This document shows positions 11,411 to 29,162 of a DNA stretch of 64,000 bases, in pieces (the stretch's first letter is position 1; every line of letters starts with the position of its first letter). The position numbers and the translations under genes are program-made. The notes under the pieces are model-generated. The model made no database searches, had not been told where the DNA came from, and saw only the letters and a list, made by a program, of their open reading frames with translations. The stretch spans positions 224,698 through 288,697 of IMG/VR virus record IMGVR_UViG_3300020473_000010, one strand, 5' to 3'.

Positions 11411-11767
11411 TTACTTCTCCGATATTTGACTAAATAAGTCATCGGGATCTAATTTGGAATTTTTTTCTTCTTCAGATGCAATAAGATCGGCCAATTTTAT
11501 TAATTGGTCATTAGCTTTATTCATTCTTTCCAAGTATTTTGCCATAATAGAACCGAGTTGTACATGATCTGAAATACCTGCTGACATAGTTGTATATACA
11601 TCGGTAAACATCATATATGCATTCATGCGATCAACGACTGCATTTTCATAGATCTCTTTCCACAGGTATTTCTTTTTCCCTTCTAAATTTTCTATAGAAT
11701 TAAGCAATTCACCAAAGCTGTTAATTTTTTCTTTTAACTCTTCAGGGGACGTTGTTTTATTATTCAT
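11411..11767 (-). CDS. Hypothetical helical protein
   Basis: 118-aa ORF coupled (ATGA) to the sigma gene. Confidence 0.6.
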   Translation of the reverse strand: MNNKTTSPEELKEKINSFGELLNSIENLEGKKKYLWKEIYENAVVDRMNAYMMFTDVYTTMSAGISDHVQLGSIMAKYLERMNKANDQLIKLADLIASEEEKNSKLDPDDLFSQISEK

Positions 11768-12489
11768 AATATATCAAACTCCTTATCTGGGCCGGCTATT
11801 TCTCTATATAGCTTTCTAATATTACTCATACAAACTGATAATTGTTTTGAATTTAGCCCACTTAATTCTCTTACATAAACAAATATTGCTCTTTTGTTTA
11901 AAAAATCTAAATCTTCAACGGTTTCGAAGATTGTTATAATTGCATCCATGCACCTTATTTCTGAGTCTGATCTTACCCTAGAGCGCATTACTTTTAACAT
12001 GTTATGAATTGTTTGCAAATTTTGGGCCTCTATAAGGTCTTGTGATGGGGACGGGACTGTATTTCCAGTAGAAGCTAAGACTGCTTCAGCATTCAAATTA
12101 GACGAATCATCATCTATGAATACCATTCTATCTTTATGTTTTTTTACTTTTCTACTTTGGATAATTAGCCAATTTTTTGCAACAACATTAAAATAGGAAA
12201 ATGCATTTTTTCCGCGGGTATGATCGAACTTATGAAGGGTTTCATATAAATTGATTACACAAGAGTGTTTTAAGCCTGGAACATCTGCGTGTTGTTTATG
12301 AAAACCATAAATAAATATTAAATTTTCAGCAAGTTTATCTAAAGCTGGTTCAATTTCTGTTTTATATAGTTTGTTTCTTAATTCTTGACAGTCTGATTCA
12401 CAAAAATCATGGATTGCCTGTTGGGTTGCCTTGGTGAAATATGGAGCACGACCCGAACGTGGTCTTTTTATTTTTTTACGGCCTTTCAT
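11764..12489 (-). CDS. Phage late-transcription sigma factor, T4 gp55-like
   Basis: PYFT...AI..F...KLAENLIF...KFDHTRGKNAFSYFNVVAKNWLI matches sigma region 2 of gp55-type factors; helical C-terminus. Confidence 0.75.
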   Translation of the reverse strand: MKGRKKIKRPRSGRAPYFTKATQQAIHDFCESDCQELRNKLYKTEIEPALDKLAENLIFIYGFHKQHADVPGLKHSCVINLYETLHKFDHTRGKNAFSYFNVVAKNWLIIQSRKVKKHKDRMVFIDDDSSNLNAEAVLASTGNTVPSPSQDLIEAQNLQTIHNMLKVMRSRVRSDSEIRCMDAIITIFETVEDLDFLNKRAIFVYVRELSGLNSKQLSVCMSNIRKLYREIAGPDKEFDIL

Positions 12490-12775
12490 CTATTTGGTTC
12501 TCCTCGTTTTCTATTTTTGCAATTTCGTTTGCGACTCTGAGAATTGAATCTCTTGAATCCTTAATGTCATTTATAACTTGCCTAATTTGTGGAGAATCAT
12601 AAAATATTGGGATTTCTAAAATTTTTGATACACTAGAATAGCGATCATCTAGAATATCTAAACTTGTTTCTAATGAATCTGTAATTTTTAATATTATATT
12701 TGCAAATTTATAATTATAATATAACGAAACTATTAACGCTATAGAAATTATCGCTAATAACCAATTTATTATCAT
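12476..12775 (-). CDS. Small membrane-anchored protein
   Basis: N-terminal hydrophobic helix followed by coiled-coil. Confidence 0.6.
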   Translation of the reverse strand: MIINWLLAIISIALIVSLYYNYKFANIILKITDSLETSLDILDDRYSSVSKILEIPIFYDSPQIRQVINDIKDSRDSILRVANEIAKIENEENQIDERP

Positions 12776-13923
12776 GTATGATCTCTTAAAAATTTATCGT
12801 ATAATTCTGATATAGCTTCCTGGGAATATTTTTGCCTTATTACTTTTCCTAATTTACTAGACCAGGTTTCCGGGATGGATGTTCCTTTTTTATAAAATTT
12901 ATAAATCCTTTCGGATAAATGCCTAAAATCAATCTCTGCCCAAGAGGAACCTTGGATCCAGATATTGTTATCAACTCTTGAATCTGGTATATTTTTTAAA
13001 TTATATGAAACGGACAACCATTTACCTTTGTTTAAAAACTCGCAATGAGCTGACCAGTTAGTCGCAATAACTGGCAAATTACAAGCTGCGGCTTCTAGCA
13101 TGGGGAGACCAAACCCTTCTCCTCTTGTACCGGAAAGTAATGCTTTAACTTTTTTGTTTTTATATAATCCCGAGATTTCACTCTCCGATAAGGCACCGTG
13201 AATTAAATATACTTTTGGATATTGACCGTCTCTTACTTGGTTAATTAAATTAGATAAATTTCTTCTAGTAATCCTCCTATCAATGGCGCAATTTCTTCCG
13301 GAATTTGTTTTTATTATTAAACCAACTTCTTTGTTGTCTTTAAAAGTATTACAGAAAGTTGCTATTGTATTATACGTATTTTTCCTGTCATCTTCCTGAG
13401 ATCCAGTTAATTGTCCTAAAAGTAAAAAATTAAAATCTGTTTTAATTTCCGGCATAGAAAAATCATTATCGTTTAAGCACTCTGAAATAAAACTTTCCGG
13501 AATAACTGAAATATTTTCAGATTCGGCACCTGAATTAACTAATACTTTTTTCGAAAATTCAGATGGAACGATAACATGATCCATGTTTTTGCAATTTTCT
13601 ATCCATCCTGGATTGCATTTTGTTGCTTCTACTACAGCCGTGACTCCAAAATTCCGCTCTGCAAGATTAGGATCCCACTCATTTGGTAGTTGGATTTGAA
13701 AAGAAATATTTGGTTTAATAATTGGAGGAGCTGATCTTTCCATTATTTCTCCAATTAGGCCATTTAGGTCATCCGGGTTGCAATACCACGGAGTAATTCC
13801 CCATGGGGTAACTGAAACTGAAATCAAATATTTTTTTTCTAATGCCCATTTAAAAATCTGTCTGGCATGTACACCATAGCCAGACTGAGTTAAAAGCGGG
13901 CCTCGGATATGAATATGTTTCAT
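12772..13923 (-). CDS. Glycosyltransferase family 4 (GT-B)
   Basis: SGYGVHAR, IVPSEFSK, DRKN, TRGEGFGLPMLEAAACNLPVIATNWSAH. Confidence 0.9.
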   Translation of the reverse strand: MKHIHIRGPLLTQSGYGVHARQIFKWALEKKYLISVSVTPWGITPWYCNPDDLNGLIGEIMERSAPPIIKPNISFQIQLPNEWDPNLAERNFGVTAVVEATKCNPGWIENCKNMDHVIVPSEFSKKVLVNSGAESENISVIPESFISECLNDNDFSMPEIKTDFNFLLLGQLTGSQEDDRKNTYNTIATFCNTFKDNKEVGLIIKTNSGRNCAIDRRITRRNLSNLINQVRDGQYPKVYLIHGALSESEISGLYKNKKVKALLSGTRGEGFGLPMLEAAACNLPVIATNWSAHCEFLNKGKWLSVSYNLKNIPDSRVDNNIWIQGSSWAEIDFRHLSERIYKFYKKGTSIPETWSSKLGKVIRQKYSQEAISELYDKFLRDHT

Positions 13924-15176
13924 TATATTTCCTCTATTGAGATACGCTTATATTTAGTTTTCCAAGATTCCAAAGTTTCTAACATGGTATTATGCCATGC
14001 ATCAACTGTGTTTTGGTGGTTAAATTCAGATTCAACATAATTTTTTGCCTTTTGACCTAAGGCTTTTCGGCCTTCGGCGCCCAGTTTATACATATCCCAA
14101 ATTTTTTCGCTAATGGTTTCAACCGATGTATAATCTTCATAAATGTATGGAACATTTTGAGAACCAACTAAAGTTTTTAGTTCTATTGGAAGAGCAAAAC
14201 CATTTTCAGTATTATCTCTATGGTCAATAACCTGCCTTGTTTGTCCTCCAGTTTTTGGTGCGATTATGGGAGTTCCTACTTGCATAGCTTCCAATGTGGA
14301 TAAACCGAACCCTTCTGCGTAACTTATATTAATTGTAAAATCAGCAATATTATGCAATGTATTAACTACATCGAAACCTATTCTTTTATTGGAGAACACA
14401 ACATTGTCAATTAACCCAAGCATTTCTATCATAGAAAACAAATTTGGGCCTTCTTTATCTAATGGGTCAGTATGCATTAATAAAGTGGCGTTTTTGTGAC
14501 CTTCTTCTTTTTCTAATCTTTCTAGAAAGATCTTCCAAGCCCACAATAAATCGCCCGGGCGCTTTCTTCTTGCGTTTCTATTGATCCAAAACCCTAAAAA
14601 ATGATCTTTGCGATCGGGTCCTAGAATATTTAATTTTTCTGTTTTAATTTTATCTTCTGATAATTGGAAAAATGTTTTGCCAGGAAGGCTATGGGGAATA
14701 AATTTTGTTTTTTCTGGGTAGTGTTTTACTACTTGTTCGTATGTATGGTAAGAATGACAATTAATTAGGTCTACAGAATCATAGTAACCATTATTAAATT
14801 CCGGGTAAGGGGCATTATCCCAAACATGCCAATATACGATTGGACATATTTGATGGATTTCATCTTCCATTTCAAAAATATGAATATAAAATCTTGGATC
14901 AGTGAAAAGGAAAATGATATCTGGTTTTTCTGTTGCTAAAACAACACGAATCATTTCTCTTGTTCCAAATCCATCAATTGGCTTTATAATAAAATCATCA
15001 TTTACTTTTGCGACGGTATAGTCGTCATGCTTCATAGCGGCGCCAAGTTGGCGCACTGTCCAACAGCCTTTTTCAATTAAACCGTTTATTAAATGTCTAG
15101 ACTGTACTCCAACACCGCTGGTGCTTAGAGCGTGGTCGGAAATCATCACAATCTTCTTTTTACCATCCGTTTCCAC
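13923..15176 (-). CDS. Glycosyltransferase family 4 (GT-B)
   Basis: NRNARRKRPG, SYAEGFGLSTLEAMQVGTPIIA. Confidence 0.9.
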   Translation of the reverse strand: METDGKKKIVMISDHALSTSGVGVQSRHLINGLIEKGCWTVRQLGAAMKHDDYTVAKVNDDFIIKPIDGFGTREMIRVVLATEKPDIIFLFTDPRFYIHIFEMEDEIHQICPIVYWHVWDNAPYPEFNNGYYDSVDLINCHSYHTYEQVVKHYPEKTKFIPHSLPGKTFFQLSEDKIKTEKLNILGPDRKDHFLGFWINRNARRKRPGDLLWAWKIFLERLEKEEGHKNATLLMHTDPLDKEGPNLFSMIEMLGLIDNVVFSNKRIGFDVVNTLHNIADFTINISYAEGFGLSTLEAMQVGTPIIAPKTGGQTRQVIDHRDNTENGFALPIELKTLVGSQNVPYIYEDYTSVETISEKIWDMYKLGAEGRKALGQKAKNYVESEFNHQNTVDAWHNTMLETLESWKTKYKRISIEEI

Positions 15177-16023
15177 TACAATGCTCCGTATTTTTAAATG
15201 AACAGAATTTACAACTGTTATAATTTTTTAAAGTAAATCCCTTTTTTACGTTTTTAATCATGCTTTCAACTAATTTGTCGGTTTTTTCAAGAAATTTTGG
15301 CCCAGTAGAAACTTTAAAGATTTCACATGTAGAACCTAAAGGAGCTCCGCGTTTTAAGAAAACGAAAGCTGTTTTGATATCTTTTAAGTCAACCTGAGAT
15401 TTTTCAGACCAATATTTTTTGTAGAGCCCAACCTGAGCCAAGGATGAAAATTCTTTTTTCTTTTGATAATACCATCCATTTTTACCGGTAGTTTTCCAAT
15501 CTAAAATCCAAAAGTTTACTTTGTTTGAAGTTTTGGATTTTGGCGTCATTATAACGCAATCTATAAATCCTTTAAATTTTAAATCGAAATTATTTATAGG
15601 CTGATATAAATCGTCTTCTGCTTTTAAAATTTCCCAACCTGGAAATGTTTCATCCATGAACTTTGGAAAGTCTGATAAAATATTTTTAGAAGATTGGATC
15701 CAATCATTTAAATACTCGTGGGTATATTTAGATCCAATTGTAGCTCTTGATTCTGTAATTTTCTTAATATATTCGTGTGAATCGTATTGTTTAAGTTGCC
15801 ACCTTTGAGTAATTTTTTTTCCTACATTTTCAATTGAAATATCATTTCCGTTTAAATATTTCTCTATTTCTTCATGGATGATTGTTCCAAAATCAGCGTA
15901 TGGATTATCTTCATATGTTTCTATTTTGTCAACATACATTAGCTTATGCCTATATGAACACTCTTTCCAGGCTTTTAGTTCGGAATAAGATATATGCGGT
16001 TTACCGGTTGGAAAATTACTCAT
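15160..16023 (-). CDS. PD-(D/E)XK nuclease, Cas4/RecB-like, with Fe-S cysteines
   Basis: ISYSEL..WKEC, FGT.IH, FKGFID, ILDWKTT, Q..LY, C-terminal CKFCSFKNTEHC. Confidence 0.85.
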   Translation of the reverse strand: MSNFPTGKPHISYSELKAWKECSYRHKLMYVDKIETYEDNPYADFGTIIHEEIEKYLNGNDISIENVGKKITQRWQLKQYDSHEYIKKITESRATIGSKYTHEYLNDWIQSSKNILSDFPKFMDETFPGWEILKAEDDLYQPINNFDLKFKGFIDCVIMTPKSKTSNKVNFWILDWKTTGKNGWYYQKKKEFSSLAQVGLYKKYWSEKSQVDLKDIKTAFVFLKRGAPLGSTCEIFKVSTGPKFLEKTDKLVESMIKNVKKGFTLKNYNSCKFCSFKNTEHCSGNGW

Positions 16024-16069
16024 TTTTTGTATACCTCTCTAAATAAAGATACTCCTAAGTTTAAAGAAG

Positions 16070-17092
16070 TTAAATTTCGTTTTTTGTATAGACAGAAGGA
16101 TCAATATTATGGTATTTTCCTCTGGCAATTTTGGTTTGAATATCTAGATCGCTTTGATACATGTCTTTAACCAAATCTTTAATATCGTATTTTGGATACC
16201 ATTTTAATTTAGTTTTGGCTTTTTCAGGATTACCTAAAAGCAAAGGGACTTCATGAGGCCTAAATAGTCTTTTATCTTGCTTTACATATTTTTCAATTGA
16301 TAAGCCAGCGTGTTGGAAAACTAATTCTAAAAATGTTTTCACAGAATAGGTTTTTCCAGTTGCTAAAACATAATCATCCGGGGTATCTTGCTGAAGCATT
16401 AACCACATTCCCTGAACATAATCTTGAGCATGACCCCAATCCCGTTTTGCTTCGAGGTTTCCTAGATACAATTCTTTTTGAAGCCCTAGTTTTATTCTTG
16501 CTGCTGCAATAGTGATCTTTCTAGTTACAAATGTTTCTCCGCGGCGGGGCGACTCATGATTAAACAAGATTCCGGAACAAGCAAAAAGATTATATGCTTC
16601 TCGATAATGCCTAATCATATTATGGCAAAATAGCTTTGCACATGCGTAAGGAGATGCCGGCATAAATTTTGTATTTTCATCTTGTGGGTATACAGGGTTG
16701 TCACCATACATTTCTGAGCTTGAAGCTTGATAAAATTTAGCTTTTGGACAACAGATTCTCCAAGCTTCAAGTAATTTTAGTGTTCCCATAGCAATAGAAT
16801 CTACAGTTTCAACAGGGACTTCAAAACTAACCCTAACATGGCTTTGTGCTGCTAAGTTATATATTTCATCTGGTTTATATTTTAAAAGAAGTCGATGCAT
16901 CCAAGTAGAATCATGCATAGAACCATAATGTAAAATAAAATTAGAATCCTCAAATAGTCTATCGATTCGATCAGTTGAAATAATGCTTGTTCTTCGCTTT
17001 ATTCCTATAACTTTGTATCCTTTAGAAATTAGCAAATCTGCTAAATAACTTCCGTCTTGACCAGTGATCCCTGTAATTAATGCTGTTTTCAT
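16070..17092 (-). CDS. gmd: GDP-mannose 4,6-dehydratase
   Basis: ALITGITGQDGSYLA, YNLAAQSHVRVSF, YQASSSEMYG, SPYACAK, FNHESPRRGETFVTRKI. Confidence 0.97.
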   Translation of the reverse strand: MKTALITGITGQDGSYLADLLISKGYKVIGIKRRTSIISTDRIDRLFEDSNFILHYGSMHDSTWMHRLLLKYKPDEIYNLAAQSHVRVSFEVPVETVDSIAMGTLKLLEAWRICCPKAKFYQASSSEMYGDNPVYPQDENTKFMPASPYACAKLFCHNMIRHYREAYNLFACSGILFNHESPRRGETFVTRKITIAAARIKLGLQKELYLGNLEAKRDWGHAQDYVQGMWLMLQQDTPDDYVLATGKTYSVKTFLELVFQHAGLSIEKYVKQDKRLFRPHEVPLLLGNPEKAKTKLKWYPKYDIKDLVKDMYQSDLDIQTKIARGKYHNIDPSVYTKNEI

Positions 17093-17136
17093 ATTTTATT
17101 TGTAGTGAAAGGTTTGTTGAAGTTTTGCCAATTCTA

Positions 17137-17165
17137 ATTTTATCTAGTCTATACCATTTGTACAA
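17137..17165 (-). promoter_or_regulatory. Sigma70-like promoter TTGTAC-N17-TAAAAT upstream of gmd
   Basis: Exact 17-nt spacing, intergenic; member of a family with about 10 copies in the window. Confidence 0.6.
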
Positions 17166-17167
17166 GA

Positions 17168-18316
17168 TTATAAAATATCTAAAATTGCTTGACATATGAA
17201 TTTAATGTCCGAAGGCTTAAGTTTTTGATGACAAGGAAGGTAAAGTCCAAAATCATGAACCTTATCAGCATTAGGCAGGCTACTGAAAGAACCATATTTT
17301 TCTATCCAAAATGGATGGCGAGCTATAGATCCGCAAATTAAAGGTCGGCATTCAACATTTAATCGATTTAGTTCTTTGACAATTTGCTCTTTCTTTTTAT
17401 GTATTAGGCCGAACGCCAAAGGGGATGGATTACAACCGGTTGATTTCTGGGTCCACACGTGGTTATCTAGATAGTCTTGGTATATTTTTAGGTTTTCTCT
17501 TCTTTTTTCAATATTTTTCGAAAGGTTATTTAATTGACGGATGCCTAAAAATGCATTTAAATCTGTTGACCTTATATTAAAACCCGGTTTGATAAAGAAG
17601 TATAAAGAATTAAAATCATCTATGTTGTATTTCTCCGCATATTGTTTCTGAGAATTTGGGTCTAAATCACGTACCCAGCCATGAGAACGTAATATTAGGC
17701 ACAAATCTCTAATTTCGGGATCATTTGTACATACCATTCCACCTTCAATAGTTGACATATGATGCCCATAATAATAACTAAAGGAAGACATTAATCCATA
17801 TGTACCTACTTTTTGATCCTGATAGGTGGCACCATGGGCTTCACAACAGTCCTCTAGCAGTATTACATTGTTATCTTTACAAATCTCGAGAATGGCTGAC
17901 ATATTGTTGGCCCATCCTAAAACATGAACCAATATCACAGCTGCCGGACGATGTTCTTGGACTAGAGAAGAAAAATGGTGAATATTTAATCCCAAATCAT
18001 TAGGGTCACAATCGCAAAGTATAGGTTCGTATCCAAGCTGAATAAAAGGTGCAACAGTTGTTGCCCAACTTACGGCTGGTACTATTATTTTTTTATTCTT
18101 TAACCTCCCGGATTCAAGCAAGGCTGAAGCCATTAATAAATTAGCGCTGGAACCGGAATTAACAAAACAAGAATATAAAACGTTTTGCCATTGCGACCAA
18201 TTTTTTTCAAATTCTTGAGTAAGATGTCCTTTAGTCAGTTTCGGATCTTGGTATAGCCACTCTATTAATGCCATTCGGTCTTTTGTGCCAATTGTATCAT
18301 CAACTAGTTTTATCAT
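17168..18316 (-). CDS. GDP-4-keto-6-deoxymannose 3-dehydratase (ColD-like, PLP-dependent DegT family with active-site His)
   Basis: FVNSGSSANLL, PAVSWATT, EDCCEAHGA. SFSYYYGHHMSTIEGG carries His where DegT aminotransferases have the Schiff-base Lys. Start reassigned to 18316 (ATGA overlap). Confidence 0.8.
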   Translation of the reverse strand: MIKLVDDTIGTKDRMALIEWLYQDPKLTKGHLTQEFEKNWSQWQNVLYSCFVNSGSSANLLMASALLESGRLKNKKIIVPAVSWATTVAPFIQLGYEPILCDCDPNDLGLNIHHFSSLVQEHRPAAVILVHVLGWANNMSAILEICKDNNVILLEDCCEAHGATYQDQKVGTYGLMSSFSYYYGHHMSTIEGGMVCTNDPEIRDLCLILRSHGWVRDLDPNSQKQYAEKYNIDDFNSLYFFIKPGFNIRSTDLNAFLGIRQLNNLSKNIEKRRENLKIYQDYLDNHVWTQKSTGCNPSPLAFGLIHKKKEQIVKELNRLNVECRPLICGSIARHPFWIEKYGSFSSLPNADKVHDFGLYLPCHQKLKPSDIKFICQAILDIL

Positions 18317-19086
18317 ACTCTCTCCCATCGGTCCGGAATTACATCTTGATCTGGTGTATCGTTTGCAAACCAAATTTTTGGAGCTATAATTTTACTATTA
18401 GATTCCTCTCCAAGCCAAGCTGCCCACCAAGAAAAAGACGAATTAGCAATGATTTTGTTTTTAAACGAAGTCATGAAATAAAGATCTAAAACATCACTAA
18501 TAGAATTCATATATAAGTGGTTATTCCCAAAATGCTCTCGGCACCATTGGACATCATCGCTAAAAAACACAAATTTAGCATTATTGAATTTCCGCATCGC
18601 CAAATCGTAATAATTCGAATCTTCAGCTAAATTTTTATGTATGTCAGCCAATTTAATATAGTCGCCTCTTCTAACATGAACAGCAACCATATTTTCTTCG
18701 AGTTGAAAATTTCCATAGTAATAATTTAATTGCGATTTTACCCAATTAGTGGGGGCAAATAAATTTTTTATTTTTTCAGCATTATGAGCAAAATGTTTTT
18801 CAGATTGAAAGTATCCTTGTAAAAACATATTTTCGGAATATGGAATTTTGTGATAGTTAAAATTGGGTTCAATATATAGTTTTCTTGCCCAACTTAATTC
18901 ATTCATATATTTTATTTTTGAAAATACAGATGAAGCATATAATGTTCTTTCTTCATGAGAAGGACATGCTCCAATGACATTCAAGGGAAACACTGCTATA
19001 TCGGCATTGTCGATTGCTAAAGATTCTACAGTAGCAATAATAAACATTTGATTACCTAACCGACCTCTTATTTCCGCAGATATCAT
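18313..19086 (-). CDS. Glycosyltransferase family 11 (alpha-1,2-fucosyl/colitosyltransferase)
   Basis: GRLGNQMF, GYFQSEK, VHVRRGDY, FSDD..WC, IIANSSFSWWAAWL; start reassigned to 19086. Confidence 0.92.
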   Translation of the reverse strand: MISAEIRGRLGNQMFIIATVESLAIDNADIAVFPLNVIGACPSHEERTLYASSVFSKIKYMNELSWARKLYIEPNFNYHKIPYSENMFLQGYFQSEKHFAHNAEKIKNLFAPTNWVKSQLNYYYGNFQLEENMVAVHVRRGDYIKLADIHKNLAEDSNYYDLAMRKFNNAKFVFFSDDVQWCREHFGNNHLYMNSISDVLDLYFMTSFKNKIIANSSFSWWAAWLGEESNSKIIAPKIWFANDTPDQDVIPDRWERV

Positions 19087-20012
19087 AAGATACCCCTTAT
19101 GTGGGGGTAACTTTCTATAAACCATTCACATGTTTTTTCAAGACCAGAACGTAAATTAGTATAGGATTTATTATATCCTAATTTTTTTAAAGCTTGAGTT
19201 GATGAGGGCTTTCGGTGCTGGCCTATAGGTTTTGTTGTATCCCAAAAAATCATACCTGGGGGGAACTCAAATATTTCGCAGATTATACTTGCTACGTGTT
19301 TAATTGAATATTCAACACAGTTTCCTATATTGATCGGAAGGGAACCATCATAATTTTCTAAAAGCCAGATTAGTGTTTCAGCAATATCAAGAGAATATGT
19401 AAATTCCCTTAAAGATGAACCATCCCCCCATAAATTTACAATAGAATTATTTTGTTTTCCTTCCCATATTTTCCTTATCAAGGCTGGAATAACATGGCCA
19501 TTTTCTAAGTGAAAATTGTCATTAAACCCATATATGTTATTTGGCACAGCTGTAATATATTTCAACCCGTATTGGCTCCGTAACGCGCGAGAATGAACTT
19601 CTAGCATACGTTTAGCATAAGCATACCCATAGTTGCTTTGGTGAGGTTCTCCGTTGTGTATCTGGTCTTCTGTAAGCGGGTATTTTACTTTGTCTGGATA
19701 TATACATGTTGACAATAAAGAGACGACTTTTTGAATACCTTCTTCTTTTGCGGCATTTAATAAATTTGTATTAATTAAAATATTTTCATGGAAAAAATCA
19801 GCTATGTAATCAGAATTTCCTTTAACGCCACCAACTTTAGCAGCTAAATGGATAACAGCATCCGGATTGTGGTCTACAAACATTTTGTGGGCATAATATA
19901 GTTTTGTTAAGTCATATTCACTTGATCCAACTAAAACTAAATTGTGGGATGTATTTAAATTTCGAAAAGCAGAACCTACCATCCCAGTTCCACCAGTAAT
20001 TAATATTTTCAT
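19083..20012 (-). CDS. fcl: GDP-L-fucose synthase / ColC-like epimerase-reductase
   Basis: GGTGMVG, HLAAKVGG, STCIYP, YAYAKR, P.N.YG..DNF....HVIPALI, WGDGSSLREF. Confidence 0.9.
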   Translation of the reverse strand: MKILITGGTGMVGSAFRNLNTSHNLVLVGSSEYDLTKLYYAHKMFVDHNPDAVIHLAAKVGGVKGNSDYIADFFHENILINTNLLNAAKEEGIQKVVSLLSTCIYPDKVKYPLTEDQIHNGEPHQSNYGYAYAKRMLEVHSRALRSQYGLKYITAVPNNIYGFNDNFHLENGHVIPALIRKIWEGKQNNSIVNLWGDGSSLREFTYSLDIAETLIWLLENYDGSLPINIGNCVEYSIKHVASIICEIFEFPPGMIFWDTTKPIGQHRKPSSTQALKKLGYNKSYTNLRSGLEKTCEWFIESYPHIRGIL

Positions 20013-20014
20013 TT

Positions 20015-20656
20015 TTACCCCTTATTAAAATATATTTCATCACACCCGGTAGTACAAAATAAATTAAAGTTTTTAGATATCATGAAATCTTGTATTTCAT
20101 TGCCATAATAATTGTTTTCAACGGTTATTACTTTGATAGTGTAATTTTCGAAATTAATACTTTTTAAGATTTCTAATTCGTTGCCTTCAATATCCAGAGA
20201 AAGGATATCGATATTTGAGGGACATAAAGAAAATAACTCTTTTACAGTAACTGTTTCTACATCAATCCATTCTGGGATATTTTTAATCAATCCCTGATGT
20301 TCTTCGAACAGGATTCTTTCAATGTGATTTGGATGATATTTTGATGGAATTCCTGCTAATCCTTGGCCCCAGGCTCCGGTTGGGAATGGTTGGAATTTAG
20401 TTTCGAAACTTAACTCGCTGTTGCTAACTACAGCTTTTTGAATTATTTCCCAATCCCGATTGGTTTTTAGTATGGGGATCTGAGAAGGGTTTGGTTCAAT
20501 TAATAAGCCATCCCAACCCAAGTCTTCAAAAAATTTAGAATTACTACAATGAATTCCATCCATAGCCCCAATATCTAGGAAAAATCCTTTGGTTTGAGAT
20601 TTAAAAAATCTTTCAAATATAATTTCATCTTGCTGGTATTGGCTATAATATTTCAT
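20015..20656 (-). CDS. FkbM-family methyltransferase
   Basis: YSQYQQD, FFLDIGAMDG...SNS, W.GLLIEPN, LSLDIEGNE. Confidence 0.88.
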   Translation of the reverse strand: MKYYSQYQQDEIIFERFFKSQTKGFFLDIGAMDGIHCSNSKFFEDLGWDGLLIEPNPSQIPILKTNRDWEIIQKAVVSNSELSFETKFQPFPTGAWGQGLAGIPSKYHPNHIERILFEEHQGLIKNIPEWIDVETVTVKELFSLCPSNIDILSLDIEGNELEILKSINFENYTIKVITVENNYYGNEIQDFMISKNFNLFCTTGCDEIYFNKG

Positions 20657-21315
20657 GAATAATCCTTGAAACAACTAAAATTTCTTACATCCGGATATTT
20701 CCATGAACCTCCACAATCTTCGTTGGTTTCTGGAAGAGAGAGGAAGAGCTTGATACCATATGCAGCTTGTTCCGGAGGCATATACATATTCCACCCAAGC
20801 ATATCGATATTATCATCATCATATTTTACTGTAATATCTCGACCTTCGTATCTTGCCTTTTTAAACCACTGGTATGCACTATAATCATTTGTTAAAATTA
20901 TTCCACCTTTACCTATAGGCAATGTTTTCTTTATATGGAAAGATACACACTGATAAGTACCTTCTATATACATCCCTTTTGTAAACCTGGTTGCTCCATC
21001 GATAATAGGGTATGGATCTAGACGATATGTACCAGACCATTCGATATTATTAAAATTTGGGTTGCAACCTGCGTGAATAATTGCCTGAGGTACTGAAACA
21101 TATGTCTTTGCCGGAATTGTTATTTTGCCTGAAGCATTTAAATATTTCATGCACAAAAATAAACCATTGGTGCAATTATCTACCGCTACAGCATATTTGG
21201 AACCAGCATATTCGGCTATCATTTTTTCAAATATATCGACGATATCCCATGGGTCATTGATTTCATAGCCTAAAGGTTTAATAATTTTTATAATTTCTTC
21301 TATAGAACAATACAT
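20653..21315 (-). CDS. Short DegT/DnrJ-type PLP-dependent sugar aminotransferase (220 aa)
   Basis: FEKMIAEYAGSKYAVAVDNCTNGL, SFHIKKTLPIGKGG (Lys retained); lacks the usual C-terminal domain. Confidence 0.75.
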   Translation of the reverse strand: MYCSIEEIIKIIKPLGYEINDPWDIVDIFEKMIAEYAGSKYAVAVDNCTNGLFLCMKYLNASGKITIPAKTYVSVPQAIIHAGCNPNFNNIEWSGTYRLDPYPIIDGATRFTKGMYIEGTYQCVSFHIKKTLPIGKGGIILTNDYSAYQWFKKARYEGRDITVKYDDDNIDMLGWNMYMPPEQAAYGIKLFLSLPETNEDCGGSWKYPDVRNFSCFKDYS

Positions 21316-21989
21316 TAAATCTCCAACATTCTAGAATAATATTCGCCAATTATGAATTTTTGATTAGTGGTTGCTGTTTGTTTGTCATATAGTGGATTAT
21401 AACATTTGTTTGGCAGAATTCTAAAATCTAAGCTAACTCGAGTTTTTTCTGTTAAATTAGTTTTGTTAAAATGCCGGCAGCGATTTCCGTTCCAAACCAT
21501 AAATTGTGATGGTACCATGTTTACTGGTTTGTAATCACCTAAATTAGGAACGCTTTCTATCCATATTGTGCTAGTATCGAACATTTCGGTTAGAGGTATT
21601 AGGATATTAATTTCTCCCAGTGGGTGTTTATGGTGTTCATCTGAATCACAATGGATTGTTGTTACAGCTTTTGCTTTGGGGTATTGTATCCGAAACGAAG
21701 GTAAGGTTTGATATATTAGACTTTCTTCTTCTAAGAATAATGGGAAAATTTTATTCCTTATAAAGCTATGATAAACATATTCAAAATCTTTCCAGTTATT
21801 ATTTAGTTTTTTATAAAAAATTTCATGAAAAATACTGTGAGTATCATTTCCTAATCCGGCTATACCATCATCGGCTGAATATAGACTTTGCAAATTTTCG
21901 TGTAATAATTCTAATTCGCTAACACCAAACAACTGTTTTAATAAAGCGGAAAAATTATATTGATTTTTATCGAAATAATAATGTTTCAT
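21315..21989 (-). CDS. StrG-like / 2OG-Fe(II)-type oxygenase
   Basis: YQTLPSFR, H-x-D (HCD), EINILIPLT, H.N..N.T..TRVSLDFRI. Confidence 0.65.
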   Translation of the reverse strand: MKHYYFDKNQYNFSALLKQLFGVSELELLHENLQSLYSADDGIAGLGNDTHSIFHEIFYKKLNNNWKDFEYVYHSFIRNKIFPLFLEEESLIYQTLPSFRIQYPKAKAVTTIHCDSDEHHKHPLGEINILIPLTEMFDTSTIWIESVPNLGDYKPVNMVPSQFMVWNGNRCRHFNKTNLTEKTRVSLDFRILPNKCYNPLYDKQTATTNQKFIIGEYYSRMLEI

Positions 21990-21992
21990 AAT

Positions 21993-22706
21993 TTATTTTT
22001 TTACTAATAGAGGATCGAAAGTTTTTTTGATATCTTCTAAAAAGATATTTTTAAAAGCTGATCTTTGAGCAGTGACTAATTCTTTTTTGGTAATTTCCTC
22101 TATGTTTAATGCCGCAGGATCATGAGGCGTTAATCTTTTCGTTAATTTTTTATTACAGTGTTTATAAATTTCATCGAATCTTTTAGGGTTCCATGGACGG
22201 TTTAAAAATTTTATGCAGCTTTGAAATGTTTGGGCACCATTGTCTCTTATTTCTTCATATTTTATGAAATGCAAATTAGTAATATTTGATTGGTTATTAA
22301 GATAAAATTGCAAATGCTTATAATATTCCAACTTATATTTTTCGAAAGCTTCAGCAAGATCTATAGATTTTTGACCATCCCAATTTTCCGGAATATTGCC
22401 TTCATATTTCATTATAGAGAAAATTGTATCAGCTGGATTTCTATAAAGATATATTGCGTTTTTTAACCCAAAAACAGGACCTTCAGATGGATGTGGTTTC
22501 GCGATATAACGGTGGTGAATATGGAAACCCCATATATTTGATGGCCGGGGATTAAAAAATGACTGTACAATCGAGGGTTCATTTAAATAGGCTTCCATCA
22601 AAATCCTAAACCAATGGCTTCCTGTACGAGGATATGATATCAATCTAGGAAAATCTAGGTTATCAAATATTTTTAGTTCTTCTTTTTTGTAGCTTATGTC
22701 AAACAT
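21993..22706 (-). CDS. Sulfotransferase
   Basis: 5'-PSB-like LISYPRTGSHWFR, 3'-PB-like YLYRNPAD...S, IKYEE. Confidence 0.8.
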   Translation of the reverse strand: MFDISYKKEELKIFDNLDFPRLISYPRTGSHWFRILMEAYLNEPSIVQSFFNPRPSNIWGFHIHHRYIAKPHPSEGPVFGLKNAIYLYRNPADTIFSIMKYEGNIPENWDGQKSIDLAEAFEKYKLEYYKHLQFYLNNQSNITNLHFIKYEEIRDNGAQTFQSCIKFLNRPWNPKRFDEIYKHCNKKLTKRLTPHDPAALNIEEITKKELVTAQRSAFKNIFLEDIKKTFDPLLVKK

Positions 22707-23306
22707 TTACCAGATCTCCCTTGTTACTTTTTTTGAAAGCATGTGGCCTTCAATTGTTTTTTCATCTAAACTCGAGAGATCAAGAAATGCATGGAGTGAT
22801 TCAAATTGAGTATTATAAAACCCTTTTTTCCTTAAGTCTTCTTCTAATGGATATTTAGCTGAATTTAAATTATTTCTGCTTAAGAAATAACCTCCTTCTA
22901 CAATGTTGTTAGCTGCCCAATTTTGAATATTATACTTTAATTCCGGGGTTAGGGGAAATGAACCGATATCGTTGTGAATGAACGCGATTGGAAAATCAGG
23001 TAATTTTAAAATATCTGAACAGTCTTGAACAATAACTCGTGGATGATTTGTAGGGTTAGCAATATCAAAACCAACGCATCTTTCATATCCAAAATGACCA
23101 CAAAGCAAATCAAAACTAATACATCGATTTGTGCCCATTACAACTATAGAACCAAAATCCGGAATATCTCTAATTTTTGTTATTATATGATCAAAAATTT
23201 TATACGCATAATAGTTTTTTCCATAACCATGTACATCTTGATTATGGTTATGTTCATCTGTATTTGAGAACCAGAATTTTTCACTATAGTATTTTTTTTC
23301 AGACAT
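22707..23306 (-). CDS. Putative SAM-dependent methyltransferase-like protein
   Basis: Weak Rossmann-like motifs (VVMGT..., VGFDI, EGGYF); located in the glycan island. Confidence 0.4.
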   Translation of the reverse strand: MSEKKYYSEKFWFSNTDEHNHNQDVHGYGKNYYAYKIFDHIITKIRDIPDFGSIVVMGTNRCISFDLLCGHFGYERCVGFDIANPTNHPRVIVQDCSDILKLPDFPIAFIHNDIGSFPLTPELKYNIQNWAANNIVEGGYFLSRNNLNSAKYPLEEDLRKKGFYNTQFESLHAFLDLSSLDEKTIEGHMLSKKVTREIW

Positions 23307-24186
23307 TTGGGTTTCTCTTTTTAATTGCCCGATAAATAAATTCATCAAAATCATAATACTGTAAAGCTTTTTGGTAATTAATTTGAAGAGAAGATGAAAA
23401 CTTTTCGTATAAGTCGTTGTTTAAATTTGGAATAATATTCTCTAATTCCTCTATTGTGTTGAAAATTATTATTGAATCCGGGTCAAAAAATTCTTTAATA
23501 TTTGGGGCGCCCCAATATACCGGGATTGTTCTACATGCAAAGCAGTCTAATATTTTTTCAGTAAAATAATTTTCAGCTCGGTTATTTTCTATCACTATTG
23601 AAAATCTATAATCGTTTAAAGCATCTGATTTATATTCTAGGGGTTTTTTAGTTCCTCTACCATAACAATCAAAACCTTTAAGTTTTGCTGCAATTTCATG
23701 ACGTAATTTATGACCAGCTATATCTTTTTTATCAGAAAAAATGTGAGAAATATTTTTTGTTTTAACAATAGATTTTTGATATATTGATTTTGTGTCGACA
23801 AATAATCCATCGGCTGGAATAAATTCACATTTTTCAGGATAGGTTTCTAACAGGTATTTATCCCAGGTTAAAATTAGATCGAAATTACTAATGTTAGATT
23901 CTAAAACCCTATATATTTCTGGATCATATGCTCTGGGCTCCATGGTCCATGCAATTTTATAAAATTTCGAAGGAAACTGATCAGCATAGCCAAAAAGCTT
24001 GTCTGAAAATATTATTGTTTCATAATTGTCAATTAATTTTATTGCTTCCGGGTCTAGACAGAGAGAACCATCTTCAACAAAAGTTAATTTGTTGTATTTT
24101 ATGTGTTTGGTTTTTCTACCTTTTTCCAGAGCATCTGCCCAACATTCCGCGTGGCTGATGTTTATATCACAAAAATTAACAATCAT
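23299..24186 (-). CDS. Glycosyltransferase family 10 (alpha-1,3-fucosyltransferase-like)
   Basis: YRFSIVIEN...YFTEKILDCF...IPVYWGAPN. Confidence 0.88.
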   Translation of the reverse strand: MIVNFCDINISHAECWADALEKGRKTKHIKYNKLTFVEDGSLCLDPEAIKLIDNYETIIFSDKLFGYADQFPSKFYKIAWTMEPRAYDPEIYRVLESNISNFDLILTWDKYLLETYPEKCEFIPADGLFVDTKSIYQKSIVKTKNISHIFSDKKDIAGHKLRHEIAAKLKGFDCYGRGTKKPLEYKSDALNDYRFSIVIENNRAENYFTEKILDCFACRTIPVYWGAPNIKEFFDPDSIIIFNTIEELENIIPNLNNDLYEKFSSSLQINYQKALQYYDFDEFIYRAIKKRNPNV

Positions 24187-25559
24187 TTAATAGCCCAATT
24201 TTCCCAAATAAATGGGAAAAAATAGGTAAGTTCATGGGTTTTCTCCAGATCACCTCTAATTTTTTCATATTTTTGGATTGAATCATCATCAATAGGGTGG
24301 AATTGGACTTGTAGATTTTTAACTTTGTTAATATCACCAGATGATATCATTGCAGGAAGCACTTCATATTCTGATCCTTCAATATTCATTTTTAACAAAT
24401 CGATGGTGTTGAAATTTTCTAGTGCTTTTGTCACAGAAACAAGGCTTATATTTCCATTAGGATCATCGACAACCCGAGTTGCAAGATCATCTTCTATCAT
24501 TTTTACTTTTCTTGTTGTTCCACCAATGCCCAAATTGTATACTTTAATGTTTGGTTTATCATTAAATTTTTCTTTTAGTAAATTTGAGAACTTTTCAAAT
24601 GGTTCATAGACATGAATTTCGCAATTATATTTGTCATTAATTTGTTGGGCCCACTCTCCTTTAAATCCACCGACATCTATTACAGTAGAATCTGAATTTA
24701 AATCATAGTTGAGCCTAAGTGTATTATCGCCATCCTTTTTTACCCATTCTTTGACAGCTGTTCCTTGAATTTCTTTAAGAAATTGAAGTGGGGTTTTTGG
24801 AGGAGGCCCTGGGAACCTTTCGTATTTTTTCCTTTTCCTTACTAGCATTTCAACACGATGCTGATCCTCTTGGCGGATTTGATCATCGCTAATAGGGTTA
24901 AATCTGTTATAACAATAAACTATATTTGGAACAAAAAGAGTTCTTTCCCGAGACATTTCTAACATTGGCAGCATAAAAGCTACATCCCAACCTACGGAAA
25001 AATATTTTCCATCTTCATCTCTAAGATCTTCATCTTTGATTGCATGCCATAATTTTGACCTAAATGTCCTAAGGTGGCTTGTAACAAATTTGTACTCTCG
25101 AAACGCGTTTTTCTGGATAACTTCCGGTGGGAGAGGAAAACAATTTGACATTCCACCAGTGGGGTGGTGAACGTGATTACCATAGGTTAGCATAGGATTA
25201 TGCTTATCATAAACATCGGCGATTATGGCAAGAGAATAGTCTGTAAACAAGAAGTCATCTCCATCAATAACCATTAACACAGCTTCTGGATCGTCTTTTG
25301 TTTTAAGAAAATTAAATCCATCAACAATATTTTTTAATGCTTTTACATTTTTTTCATTATGGATTACCGAAAATCTTGGATCTTTTTCTAGAAACTCAAG
25401 AGAATCTAGAATCTCTTTTGTTTTATCGGTGGAGGCATCATTAATTACAACGCACTCAAAATGATTGTAACGCTGTTTATAAATTGTTGATAAACAACGC
25501 TCAATCCATGCTTCAGTGTTGTATGTTGGTACTACTATTTTCATTTTAGGAAACGACAT
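24183..25559 (-). CDS. GT2 glycosyltransferase fused to FkbM methyltransferase
   Basis: VVPTYN, INDASTD, IDGDD N-terminal domain; VIDVGGFKGEW, YEP, LLKMNIEGSEY C-terminal domain. Confidence 0.88.
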   Translation of the reverse strand: MSFPKMKIVVPTYNTEAWIERCLSTIYKQRYNHFECVVINDASTDKTKEILDSLEFLEKDPRFSVIHNEKNVKALKNIVDGFNFLKTKDDPEAVLMVIDGDDFLFTDYSLAIIADVYDKHNPMLTYGNHVHHPTGGMSNCFPLPPEVIQKNAFREYKFVTSHLRTFRSKLWHAIKDEDLRDEDGKYFSVGWDVAFMLPMLEMSRERTLFVPNIVYCYNRFNPISDDQIRQEDQHRVEMLVRKRKKYERFPGPPPKTPLQFLKEIQGTAVKEWVKKDGDNTLRLNYDLNSDSTVIDVGGFKGEWAQQINDKYNCEIHVYEPFEKFSNLLKEKFNDKPNIKVYNLGIGGTTRKVKMIEDDLATRVVDDPNGNISLVSVTKALENFNTIDLLKMNIEGSEYEVLPAMISSGDINKVKNLQVQFHPIDDDSIQKYEKIRGDLEKTHELTYFFPFIWENWAIK

Positions 25560-26484: not shown

Positions 26485-27212
26485 AATTCTTCCTGGTTTG
26501 TCGAAGTGTTCCTCCTGTAACAATAAAGTTTTTCAGCTAATATCGATGTTCTGGAAGTTAAAGCTGTTACTCTGTAATTAAAATCTGAATCTTCTGATAA
26601 TAATGTTCTTAAGCCGAGATTTGGAGGATGAAACCTAATTCCGTGGATCCATATTGTTTGATAAAACATTGCTGATGTTCCAGCTGTTTCAAAATTACCG
26701 GTATAAAAATGGTTTATTCCTGGTAACTGAAAACCTCGAGTTACTGTTTTGGTAACTTCTGGGCATCCGATTAATTTTAATCCATCGTTGACGTCGAGCG
26801 TAAGATCTTTATATTTTTTGACATGACTTTCCTCAAAACAGTGATAAAACCCGCATAGATTATTTACCGCTTTTGATTCAACTAATGCTAAATATTGAGC
26901 CTGAATTCTCTGTTTGAGAGATACATCATCAGCGTCGTGACTTGTACAGATAGTAGCATCAGTAGTACGAATTGCTTCATTCAGACACCACCATTTCCCT
27001 TTGTTCTCGTTGTTTATGTGGTACCTAATTCTTGTATCAGAGAAGCCTTCTAGTATATCTTTAAACTCTTCTAAGTTATCTGACCCATCATCTACCACAC
27101 AAATATCTAAGTTGTCATAGGATTGATTCTGGATTGATTCTATTGACTCTTTAAGATATTGATTATGATTGTAATTGCATATTGTTACTAAAATCTTGTT
27201 TGGTGTTTCCAT
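26481..27212 (-). CDS. Glycosyltransferase family 2
   Basis: YN...YL.ESIESI.NQ, VVDDGS, HDADD, EDSDF. Confidence 0.9.
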   Translation of the reverse strand: METPNKILVTICNYNHNQYLKESIESIQNQSYDNLDICVVDDGSDNLEEFKDILEGFSDTRIRYHINNENKGKWWCLNEAIRTTDATICTSHDADDVSLKQRIQAQYLALVESKAVNNLCGFYHCFEESHVKKYKDLTLDVNDGLKLIGCPEVTKTVTRGFQLPGINHFYTGNFETAGTSAMFYQTIWIHGIRFHPPNLGLRTLLSEDSDFNYRVTALTSRTSILAEKLYCYRRNTSTNQEEL

Positions 27213-29130: not shown

Positions 29131-29150
29131 ATTGTATCTCCTATTACAAG

Positions 29151-29162
29151 AATAAAATAACC
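29151..29162 (+). repeat. Left copy of a 12-bp inverted repeat AATAAAATAACC
   Basis: Exact reverse complement of 34046-34057; the two copies bracket the + strand cassette. Confidence 0.6.

What the first reader, a model, noticed from the sequence alone, without database searches (positions are those of the whole stretch)
16070..20012. Complete GDP-L-colitose synthesis and transfer block in a phage
Seen: contiguous fcl/colC-like, GT11, PLP enzyme and gmd genes. The PLP enzyme has GHHMSTIEGG, with His at the position of the catalytic Lys. Known: this Lys-to-His change marks ColD (GDP-4-keto-6-deoxymannose 3-dehydratase) and the related E1 dehydrase. Gmd, ColD and ColC make GDP-colitose, and the GT11 enzyme WbgN is an alpha-1,2-colitosyltransferase in E. 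coli O55. Inference: the phage makes the rare 3,6-dideoxysugar colitose (possibly also fucose, used by the GT10) and caps its glycan with H/Lewis-like epitopes.
Basis: partly seen in the sequence, partly recalled or inferred. Interest (0 to 1): 0.68.

Follow-up and report, generated by a model that had tools for sequence, protein, structure and literature searches.

The report
Phage fucose/colitose sugar gene block
A large marine T4-like phage carries a tight four-gene block that should turn the host's GDP-mannose into GDP-fucose and, very probably, the rare 3-deoxy sugar GDP-colitose. The same block is present but overlooked in cultured cyanophages and in many uncultured viral contigs.

Summary
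On the minus strand lie gmd (16070-17092), a DegT-family PLP/PMP enzyme (17168-18316), a GT11 transferase (18313-19086) and an fcl-like reductase (19083-20012). The last three are coupled by ATGA stop/start overlaps.

The PLP enzyme is a ColD-type 3-dehydratase:
- His replaces the catalytic Lys.
- The E1/SpnQ Fe-S cysteine motif is absent.
- ColD gives the best sequence and fold matches.
- It shares a 100/100-supported clade with E. coli ColD.

It is only about 35% identical to E. coli ColD. GDP specificity is therefore inferred from gene context.

The fcl-like gene is not a dedicated ColC. Of its 80 closest viral relatives, 76 sit beside gmd and only 9 beside a ColD gene. GDP-fucose output is therefore secure. 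GDP-colitose needs this Fcl to accept the 3-deoxy intermediate, which is untested.

The block is not unique. Cultured Synechococcus phages ACG-2014f and S-CAM7 carry ColD homologues, and at least 587 IMG/VR stretches encode relatives. I found no paper on phage-encoded colitose. The glycan acceptor is unknown, and the H/Lewis-like capping idea is speculation. This is a new member of a known kind, of moderate interest.

The parts
16070..17092 (-). gmd, GDP-mannose 4,6-dehydratase (340 aa)
   Evidence: TIGR01472 scores 454.7 bits, above the equivalog cut-off of 415. PF16363 matches full length at 427 bits. It is 72% identical to the gmd of the syntenic sister contig.
17168..18316 (-). ColD-type PMP-dependent GDP-4-keto-6-deoxymannose 3-dehydratase (382 aa). 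The ORF is open up to a TTG at 18373, but the ATG at 18316 is the likely start.
   Evidence: PF01041 scores 245 bits. Best PDB sequence hit is ColD 2GMS at 1.7e-62, against E1 at 1.2e-40 and perosamine synthase at 1e-30. His185 aligns with ColD His188 and with the aminotransferase Lys. The E1 Cys motif is absent. IQ-TREE places it in a clade with ColD at 100/100. The AlphaFold model has pLDDT 93, and its top 10 fold matches are all ColD at TM 0.89. The start overlaps the GT11 stop in an ATGA.
18313..19086 (-). GT11 glycosyltransferase (257 aa), a predicted alpha-1,2 transferase of GDP-L-6-deoxyhexoses (fucose and/or colitose)
   Evidence: PF01531 scores 94.7 bits. It is 30% identical to E. coli O55 WbgN. 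The motifs GNQMF, HVRRGDY, FSDD..WC and IIANSSFSWW are conserved. The start overlaps the fcl stop in an ATGA.
19083..20012 (-). Fcl-type GDP-4-keto-6-deoxymannose 3,5-epimerase/4-reductase (309 aa), presumed also to serve as the ColC step
   Evidence: Best PDB hit is human GDP-L-fucose synthase at 1.1e-77. E. coli Fcl scores 7e-51 and E. coli ColC 3.2e-49. Ser107, Cys109, Tyr136, Lys140 and His179 (E. coli numbering) are conserved. It is nested in a viral Fcl clade of 17 members without ColD and 5 with it.
23299..24186 (-). GT10-like (alpha-1,3/4-fucosyltransferase family) gene in the same operon-like run, a second possible user of the GDP-deoxyhexose
   Evidence: PF00852 scores 39.3 bits against a cut-off of 23.9.
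9920..33997 (.). Surrounding glycan island of about 24 kb. It holds 2 GT4, 5 GT2-type ORFs (one below cut-off), 1 GT47 above cut-off plus 1 weak GT47-like, GT34, GT32, 2 sulfotransferases, 2 FkbM methyltransferase domains, a 2OG-Fe(II) oxygenase, a short DegT-like ORF and a PD-(D/E)XK nuclease.
   Evidence: Pfam and NCBIfam scans. Genes are packed with gaps of -56 to +75 nt. No TM-like segment occurs in 27 of the 28 ORFs screened.

Best explanation
This is a phage-borne, operon-like nucleotide-sugar cassette that branches at one intermediate.

1. Host GDP-mannose is oxidised and dehydrated by the phage Gmd to GDP-4-keto-6-deoxy-D-mannose. No phage manB or manC was found.
2. The Fcl-type epimerase/reductase converts part of this intermediate to GDP-L-fucose.
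3. The ColD-type enzyme removes the 3-OH from the rest. It uses PMP with His as acid/base, has no Fe-S cluster, and regenerates its cofactor with glutamate. The product is GDP-4-keto-3,6-dideoxy-D-mannose.
4. The same Fcl-type enzyme most likely epimerises that product at C5 and reduces it at C4, giving GDP-L-colitose.
5. The translationally coupled GT11 enzyme, and possibly the nearby GT10, transfers whichever L-6-deoxyhexose is available onto a glycan. That glycan is built by the roughly 15 other soluble transferases, sulfotransferases and methyltransferases of the island.

Shown: the gene identities, the catalytic residues, the absence of the Fe-S motif, the clade, the gene coupling, and the recurrence of the cassette in viruses.

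Inferred: GDP specificity of the dehydratase, acceptance of the 3-deoxy intermediate by the Fcl, the GT11 donor and the acceptor.
For: - Gmd scores above its equivalog cut-off.
- The ColD-like enzyme has ColD as best sequence hit (1.7e-62) and best fold hit (TM 0.89).
- His sits at the Lys column, and the RDCxCxxGxxNTC motif of E1-like proteins is missing.
- Support is 100/100 for the clade joining E. coli ColD and the phage group, apart from E1-like proteins and aminotransferases.
- Context argues for a GDP-sugar. Of the 80 best viral ColD-like loci, 50 have gmd, 57 an fcl-like gene, 30 a GT11 and 20 all four within about 10 kb. A Burkholderiales MAG homologue also sits beside gmd and fcl.
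- The Fcl catalytic residues are intact.
- ColD partnership has arisen repeatedly inside the Fcl tree, with at least 10 changes and at least 5 forced by well-supported branches. E. coli ColC itself nests with ordinary Fcl sequences.
- GT11 motifs are intact.
- The GT11 enzymes WbgN and FUT2 both accept GDP-Col and GDP-Fuc (PMC11987014).
- ATGA overlaps link fcl to GT11 and GT11 to colD.
- The mechanistic framework for ColD against E1 and SpnQ comes from PMC8987622.
Against: - The enzyme is only about 35% identical to the one ColD used as reference.
- Some close cellular homologues (54-56% identity) have no gmd within 6 kb, so the clade may not be uniformly GDP-specific.
- No dedicated ColC is present. 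The Fcl lineage is mostly found without ColD, and no data show that an Fcl reduces the 3-deoxy intermediate.
- The sister contig has an extra SDR between colD and gmd that this phage lacks. That SDR might be the real partner there.
- Position 187 is Gly rather than the Ser of E. coli ColD.
- No RNA run holds the stretch, so expression is unshown.
Confidence: 0.6

Rival explanations
1. This is a fucose-only cassette. Gmd, Fcl and GT11 make and transfer GDP-L-fucose, as described for large cyanophages. The ColD-like product is not processed by this Fcl, so it is a dead end or a minor product, and no colitose is made.
For: The Fcl belongs to a lineage that pairs with gmd alone in 67 of 80 relatives. 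Its best solved match is a bona fide GDP-fucose synthase. The combination gmd + fcl + alpha-1,2-fucosyltransferase is published for cyanophage S-SCSM1 (PMC9602691).
Against: An intact, conserved ColD-type gene is translationally coupled inside the cassette. It recurs with gmd and fcl in dozens of viral loci, which argues for selection on a working branch. A 4-keto product without a reductase would be wasteful.
Confidence: 0.2
2. The ColD branch yields a different 3,6-dideoxy or 3-deoxy-4-amino sugar, not colitose. It could be reduced without C5 epimerisation by another SDR (record 116.65-117.65 kb). It could also be aminated, methylated or hydroxylated by the neighbouring short DegT-like, FkbM and 2OG-Fe(II) proteins.
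For: A second extended SDR exists elsewhere in the genome. The sister contig carries an extra SDR between colD and gmd. The FkbM, DegT-like and 2OG-oxygenase genes lie directly upstream of fcl.
Against: The DegT-like ORF lacks about 55 internal residues and the whole C-terminal domain. The only reductase inside the coupled unit is the Fcl type, which has its epimerisation residues Cys109 and His179. That chemistry gives the L-xylo (colitose) configuration.
Confidence: 0.12
3. The dehydratase acts on a non-GDP sugar (CDP- or dTDP-4-keto-6-deoxyglucose), as the automatic names of its homologues suggest. Its place beside gmd would then be incidental.
For: JGI names for homologues, and the GenBank name in S-CAM7, read 'CDP-...-3-dehydrase'. 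Some homologues lack a nearby gmd.
Against: The Fe-S motif needed by E1 and SpnQ chemistry is absent. No CDP- or dTDP-glucose 4,6-dehydratase was seen in the island. gmd is adjacent in 50 of 80 viral loci. After ColD, the next-best fold match is GDP-perosamine synthase.
Confidence: 0.05

Closest known systems
E. coli O55 GDP-L-colitose pathway (Gmd, ColD/WbdK, ColC/WbdJ, colitosyltransferase WbgN)
   Same: It has the same four enzyme families. It shows the same His-for-Lys change, the same Fe-S-free dehydratase type and the same GT11 motifs. ColD is the best sequence and fold match.
   Different: Identities are only 30-36%. The last-step enzyme is an Fcl-lineage protein rather than an orthologue of ColC. 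The genes are carried by a lytic-type T4-like phage. They are not flanked by wzx, wzy, manB or manC, as they are in the O55 O-antigen cluster.
Synechococcus phages ACG-2014f and S-CAM7 (cultured cyanomyoviruses)
   Same: ACG-2014f gp209-212 encode gmd, an fcl-like gene, a ColD-like gene with FGHHMTTIEGG, and a GT11. A methyltransferase, further transferases and a sulfotransferase follow.
   Different: The dehydratases share only 36% identity and fall in a different subclade. The gene order differs. The ACG-2014f fcl-like gene is of the bacterial Fcl/ColC type. The genes are annotated as 'aminotransferase', 'hypothetical protein' or 'CDP-...-3-dehydrase'.
GDP-fucose and fucosyltransferase islands of large T4-like cyanophages (S-SCSM1, P-SSM2, S-SSM7)
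   Same: They combine gmd, fcl, an alpha-1,2-fucosyltransferase and many other transferases in one region. These are interpreted as cell-envelope or LPS modification genes (PMC9602691).
   Different: No 3-dehydratase is described there. This block adds the 3-deoxygenation branch.
E1 (RfbH/DdhC) and SpnQ 3-dehydratases
   Same: They share the DegT fold, the PMP cofactor and the His-for-Lys change (PMC8987622).
   Different: They carry a [2Fe-2S] Cys motif and need a reductase partner. The phage enzyme lacks the motif and branches apart from E1-like sequences.

Membership tests
ColD (GDP-4-keto-6-deoxy-D-mannose 3-dehydratase) | DegT/aspartate-aminotransferase-type fold | tested here: met
   PF01041 scores 245 bits. 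The AlphaFold model has pLDDT 93, with TM 0.89 to ColD structures.
ColD (GDP-4-keto-6-deoxy-D-mannose 3-dehydratase) | His in place of the Schiff-base Lys (His188) | tested here: met
   The alignment column is fixed by the H188N and H188K mutant chains and by the Lys of ArnB and WecE. The His is invariant in 25 relatives.
ColD (GDP-4-keto-6-deoxy-D-mannose 3-dehydratase) | No [2Fe-2S] cysteine motif (distinguishes it from E1 and SpnQ) | tested here: met
   The E1 segment RDCYCAPGCDNTC falls in a gap of the phage protein. The motif is present in 6 E1-like Bacteroidota proteins and absent from the whole phage clade and from ColD.
ColD (GDP-4-keto-6-deoxy-D-mannose 3-dehydratase) | Phylogenetic grouping with characterised ColD | tested here: met
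   Support is 100/100 for the clade of E. coli ColD plus the phage group. Only one characterised ColD was in the tree, and it sits on a long branch.
ColD (GDP-4-keto-6-deoxy-D-mannose 3-dehydratase) | Substrate is the GDP-linked 4-keto-6-deoxymannose | tested here: inconclusive
   The evidence is context only. gmd is adjacent here and in 50 of 80 viral loci. Some cellular homologues lack a nearby gmd.
ColD (GDP-4-keto-6-deoxy-D-mannose 3-dehydratase) | Glutamate-dependent PMP regeneration and 3-deoxygenation activity | not testable with these tools
   This needs an enzyme assay.
ColC (GDP-L-colitose synthase) | Fcl-like SDR with the Ser/Tyr/Lys triad and the Cys/His epimerisation pair | tested here: met
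   S107, C109, Y136, K140 and H179 are conserved. They are equally conserved in ordinary Fcl, so this feature does not discriminate.
ColC (GDP-L-colitose synthase) | Orthology with characterised ColC rather than with Fcl | tested here: not met
   It is closer to human GDP-fucose synthase (1e-77) and E. coli Fcl (7e-51, 6.3e-52) than to E. coli ColC (3.2e-49). It nests in a viral Fcl clade whose members mostly lack ColD.
GDP-L-fucose synthase (Fcl/GMER) | Equivalog-level match and pairing with gmd | tested here: inconclusive
   NF047922 scores 253 bits, below the cut-off of 500. E. coli ColC scores 304 and ACG-2014f gp210 scores 420. However, 76 of its 80 closest viral relatives lie beside gmd.
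GT11 (alpha-1,2-fucosyl/colitosyltransferases) | Pfam GT11 match and conserved motifs, including HxRRxD | tested here: met
   PF01531 scores 94.7 bits. HVRRGDY, GNQMF and IIANSSFSWW are present.
GT11 (alpha-1,2-fucosyl/colitosyltransferases) | Donor (GDP-Col or GDP-Fuc) and acceptor specificity | not testable with these tools
   It is 30% identical to WbgN. Known GT11 enzymes take both donors (PMC11987014). No solved structure matched.
Tailed phage (T4-like) | Hallmark structural genes on the same replicon | tested here: met
   The gp23 capsid match scores 212 bits. Its nearest relatives are the capsids of an uncultured huge phage, a Flavobacterium phage and a Microcystis phage. A gp25-like match is weak and just under cut-off. 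PhoH and helicase PHROGs match.

The most novel reading that the evidence does not exclude
The island may be a self-contained cytoplasmic glycosylation system. Soluble phage enzymes would build a sulfated, methylated, fucose- and colitose-bearing glycan on the phage's own virion proteins, for example the adjacent baseplate or fibre proteins or the 1709-aa T/S/G-rich protein. This would resemble giant viruses and some mycobacteriophages, rather than remodelling of host LPS. It would make 3,6-dideoxyhexoses a common component of marine virions.
Probability: 0.2. Interest if true: 0.75.

Novelty: new member of a known kind. Interest (0 to 1): 0.42.

Why it matters
3,6-dideoxyhexoses such as colitose are regarded as rare sugars of a few Gram-negative O-antigens. 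ColD-type genes sit beside gmd and fcl in this 289-kb marine phage. They also occur in cultured cyanophages (ACG-2014f, S-CAM7) and in at least 587 IMG/VR stretches. So 3-deoxygenation of GDP-sugars may be a widespread viral auxiliary function in the sea. It is currently hidden under names such as 'aminotransferase' or 'CDP-...-3-dehydrase'.

The finding also gives a testable case of one Fcl-type enzyme serving two branches, fucose and colitose. It points to tractable cultured systems (S-CAM7 or ACG-2014f on Synechococcus WH7803) in which to ask what phage-made glycans decorate. It is an annotation-level advance, not a new mechanism.

Tried and rejected
- Single-protein scans with the search for related loci found almost nothing: 2 loci in genome contigs and 1 in viral contigs. 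An alignment query was needed.
- In 401 Bacteroidota genomes no homologue reached 50% identity. Three were ColD-like at 35-38%, and the rest were E1-like at about 30%. The host phylum could not be inferred this way.
- The primary papers on the E1 and ColD structures are not held. GDP-contacting residues therefore could not be checked against a published list, and I did not rely on memory for them.
- No solved structure matches the GT11 by sequence.
- No RNA run holds the stretch, so read laying was not used and expression is untested.
- E1-like identity is rejected because the Cys motif is absent.
- Plain aminotransferase identity is rejected because His replaces Lys.
- A dedicated ColC is rejected for the fcl-like gene.
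- Phage-encoded export or initiation machinery was not found. The only multi-TM ORFs in the genome are a weak PHO4-like protein and a 1579-aa unknown, both far from the island. This was a crude hydropathy screen.
- No GT6, manB or manC was found in the genome with the queries used.
- The big representative-protein search and complex prediction were not used, because no claim here rests on them.

Full report
**What is there.**
The region 16070-20012 holds four minus-strand genes.
- gmd, 16070-17092. TIGR01472 scores 454.7 bits against a cut-off of 415.
- A DegT-family PLP/PMP enzyme. PF01041 scores 245 bits.
- A GT11 glycosyltransferase. PF01531 scores 94.7 bits.
- An Fcl-like short-chain dehydrogenase. 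NF047922 scores 253 bits, under the cut-off of 500.

Reading the upstream sequence places the likely GT11 start at 19086 and the likely dehydratase start at 18316. Each ATG overlaps the preceding stop as ATGA, so fcl, GT11 and colD are translationally coupled. A 75-nt gap precedes gmd.

The motif YYYGHHMSTIEGG is present.

**The replicon.**
The window is the last 64 kb of a 288,697-bp IMG/VR virus record, 96% complete by CheckV. The evidence that it is a tailed phage is:
- a T4 gp23-type capsid gene, whose nearest relatives are an uncultured huge phage, Flavobacterium phage immuto and Microcystis phage Mel-JY01;
- a weak gp25-like baseplate match at 26.7 bits, just under the 27.2 cut-off;
- PhoH and helicase PHROG matches;
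- three tRNAs and a tmRNA.

The stretch is held by marine metagenome runs from four studies. The host is unknown.

**The PLP enzyme is a ColD-type 3-dehydratase.**
- Sequence. Its best solved relatives are the four E. coli O55 ColD entries (1.7e-62). E1 follows at 1.2e-40 and GDP-perosamine synthase at 1e-30.
- Catalytic residue. The H188N and H188K mutant chains fix the alignment column. The first His of the phage HH pair is His188. In a joint alignment the same column holds the Schiff-base Lys of E. coli ArnB and WecE.
- Fe-S motif. The E1 segment RDCYCAPGCDNTC, part of the [2Fe-2S] motif described in PMC8987622, falls in a gap of the phage protein. The motif is present in six E1-like Bacteroidota proteins. 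It is absent from ColD and from every member of the phage clade.
- Tree. An IQ-TREE analysis (LG+C20+F+G4, 46 rows) joins E. coli ColD, the phage protein, its metagenomic relatives, ACG-2014f gp211 and a huge-phage homologue. Support is 100/100, apart from E1-like proteins and aminotransferases.
- Fold. An AlphaFold model (pLDDT 93) has ColD as its ten best fold matches (TM 0.89). GDP-perosamine synthase and E1 follow.

Two caveats apply. Identity to E. coli ColD is only about 35%. The protein also belongs to a very large uncharacterised group: 7,895 proteins at E <= 1e-20 among the candidates scored, the best at 52-65% identity, many auto-named as the CDP-sugar enzyme E1.

**Which nucleotide sugar.**
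The evidence here is context only.
- gmd is adjacent in this phage.
- With an alignment query, at least 587 IMG/VR stretches encode relatives.
- Of the 80 best loci, 50 carry gmd, 57 an fcl-like gene, 30 a GT11 and 20 all four within about 10 kb.
- A Burkholderiales MAG homologue (50% identity) also sits beside gmd and fcl.
- Against this, two groundwater homologues (54-56% identity) have no gmd within 6 kb.

I take GDP specificity as likely, not shown.

**The last step is the weak point of 'complete'.**
- The fcl-like protein matches human GDP-L-fucose synthase best (1.1e-77). E. coli Fcl scores 7e-51. In the O55 genome the colanic-acid Fcl scores 6.3e-52 and ColC 3.2e-49.
- Its catalytic residues are intact (Ser107, Cys109, Tyr136, Lys140, His179 by E. 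coli numbering). They are equally intact in ColC, so they do not discriminate.
- Of its 80 closest viral relatives (47-64% identity), 76 lie beside gmd but only 9 beside a ColD-like gene.
- In a 127-row tree it nests in a well-supported clade of 17 members without ColD and 5 with it. The ColD association needs at least 10 changes on the tree. E. coli ColC itself groups with ordinary Fcl sequences.

So this is a GDP-fucose synthase lineage into whose cassette a ColD gene has been inserted. GDP-fucose output is secure. GDP-colitose output requires that the Fcl also takes the 3-deoxy intermediate. The repeated recruitment of Fcl-type enzymes next to ColD makes that plausible, but it is untested.

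The syntenic sister contig (UViG_3300012936_000001: ColD 61%, gmd 72%, fcl 57% identity) has an extra SDR between colD and gmd that this phage lacks.

**The transferase.**
The GT11 keeps the family motifs GNQMF, HVRRGDY, FSDD..WC and IIANSSFSWW. It is 30% identical to WbgN. WbgN and human FUT2 both use GDP-Col and GDP-Fuc (PMC11987014). The donor actually used here will therefore depend on what the cassette makes. A GT10-like gene lies 4 kb upstream.

**The surroundings.**
About 24 kb (9.9-34 kb) forms a dense island. It holds:
- 2 GT4, GT11 and GT10 genes;
- 5 GT2-type ORFs, one of them below its cut-off;
- 1 GT47 match above cut-off and 1 weak GT47-like match;
- GT34 and GT32 genes;
- 2 sulfotransferases and 2 FkbM methyltransferase domains;
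- a 2OG-Fe(II) oxygenase;
- a shortened DegT-like ORF and a PD-(D/E)XK nuclease.

None of the island proteins except one 99-aa ORF has a TM-like segment. The genome shows no obvious flippase, polymerase or initiating transferase, and no manB or manC.

The phage therefore depends on host GDP-mannose. It also needs either host export machinery, if it remodels the envelope, or a cytoplasmic acceptor such as virion proteins. The sequence cannot decide between these. 'H/Lewis-like caps' is a guess from family names.

**Comparison with what is known.**
- The enzyme set equals the bacterial colitose pathway of E. coli O55, whose ColD, ColC and WbgN I retrieved for comparison. Here it is phage-borne, lacks the wzx/wzy context and uses an Fcl-lineage reductase.
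- Large cyanophages are already known to carry gmd, fcl and an alpha-1,2-fucosyltransferase (PMC9602691).
- Cultured Synechococcus phage ACG-2014f has gmd, an fcl-like gene, a His-type ColD-like gene and a GT11 in a row (gp209-212).
- In the deposited phage collection, 50 records match the dehydratase at E <= 1e-30. All but one are Synechococcus phages; those listed are ACG-2014f and S-CAM7. The genes are annotated 'aminotransferase', 'hypothetical protein' or 'putative CDP-4-keto-6-deoxy-D-glucose-3-dehydrase'.
- Full-text searches for colitose with phage or virus found no paper on virus-encoded colitose synthesis.

**Verdict.**
'Complete' overstates the ColC step, and the epitope claim is speculative. 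This is a new, phage-borne member of a known pathway, and it is one of many such viral cassettes. Interest is moderate. The main value is the pointer that 3,6-dideoxyhexose synthesis may be a common, mis-annotated viral function, together with cultured systems in which to test it.

Noticed in passing
window 63948-64000, and record bases 1-355 (L200): The last 53 bases of the record repeat its first 53 with one mismatch. A tmRNA gene (ARAGORN, tag ANNNYFYDSERLAA) lies at record 3-355, across that junction. The record is probably a complete circular or terminally redundant assembly, although IMG/VR lists it as linear.
   Followed up: partly
window 20653-21315 (-): A short DegT-like ORF of 220 aa. 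It keeps the Lys motif (SFHIKK) but lacks about 55 internal residues and the whole C-terminal domain. It could be a decayed aminotransferase or a minimal protein of unknown role, and it lies between the FkbM methyltransferase and the 2OG-Fe(II) oxygenase.
   Followed up: partly
window 15160-16023 (-): A PD-(D/E)XK nuclease-family gene (PF12705, 70 bits) is embedded in the glycan island. The order gmd, nuclease, GT4, GT4 is conserved in the sister contig UViG_3300012936_000001. Its role among sugar genes is unexplained.
   Followed up: no
L020 83-1563 (sister contig UViG_3300012936_000001): In the closest relative a GT11 gene is directly followed by a GT6 gene (PF03414, the blood-group A/B transferase family). 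No GT6 was found in this phage's genome.
   Followed up: partly
window 21993-22706 (-) and 33269-33997 (+): There are two sulfotransferase genes (PF00685, PF17784). There are also two FkbM methyltransferase domains, at 20015-20674 and in the C-terminus of 24183-25559. These suggest a sulfated and methylated glycan.
   Followed up: no
window 34056-39185 (-): A 1709-aa ORF rich in Thr, Gly, Ala and Ser, with no Pfam or PHROG match, lies directly beside the glycan island. ORFs of 522-1282 aa without family matches lie on the other side, next to the weak gp25-like gene. These are candidate fibre or structural proteins and possible glycosylation targets.
   Followed up: partly
record 116650-117645 (L202 651-1646, -): A second extended SDR (331 aa, with Epimerase and GDP_Man_Dehyd Pfam hits) lies far from the island. 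It is 34% identical to the extra SDR of the sister contig.
   Followed up: partly
window 29238-31781 (+) and 25546-26523 (-): Glycosyltransferase families more typical of eukaryotic Golgi enzymes occur alongside GT10 and GT11. They are GT34 (PF05637), GT32-like (PF04488), GT47/exostosin (PF03016, 104 bits) and a second, weak GT47-like match below cut-off.
   Followed up: no
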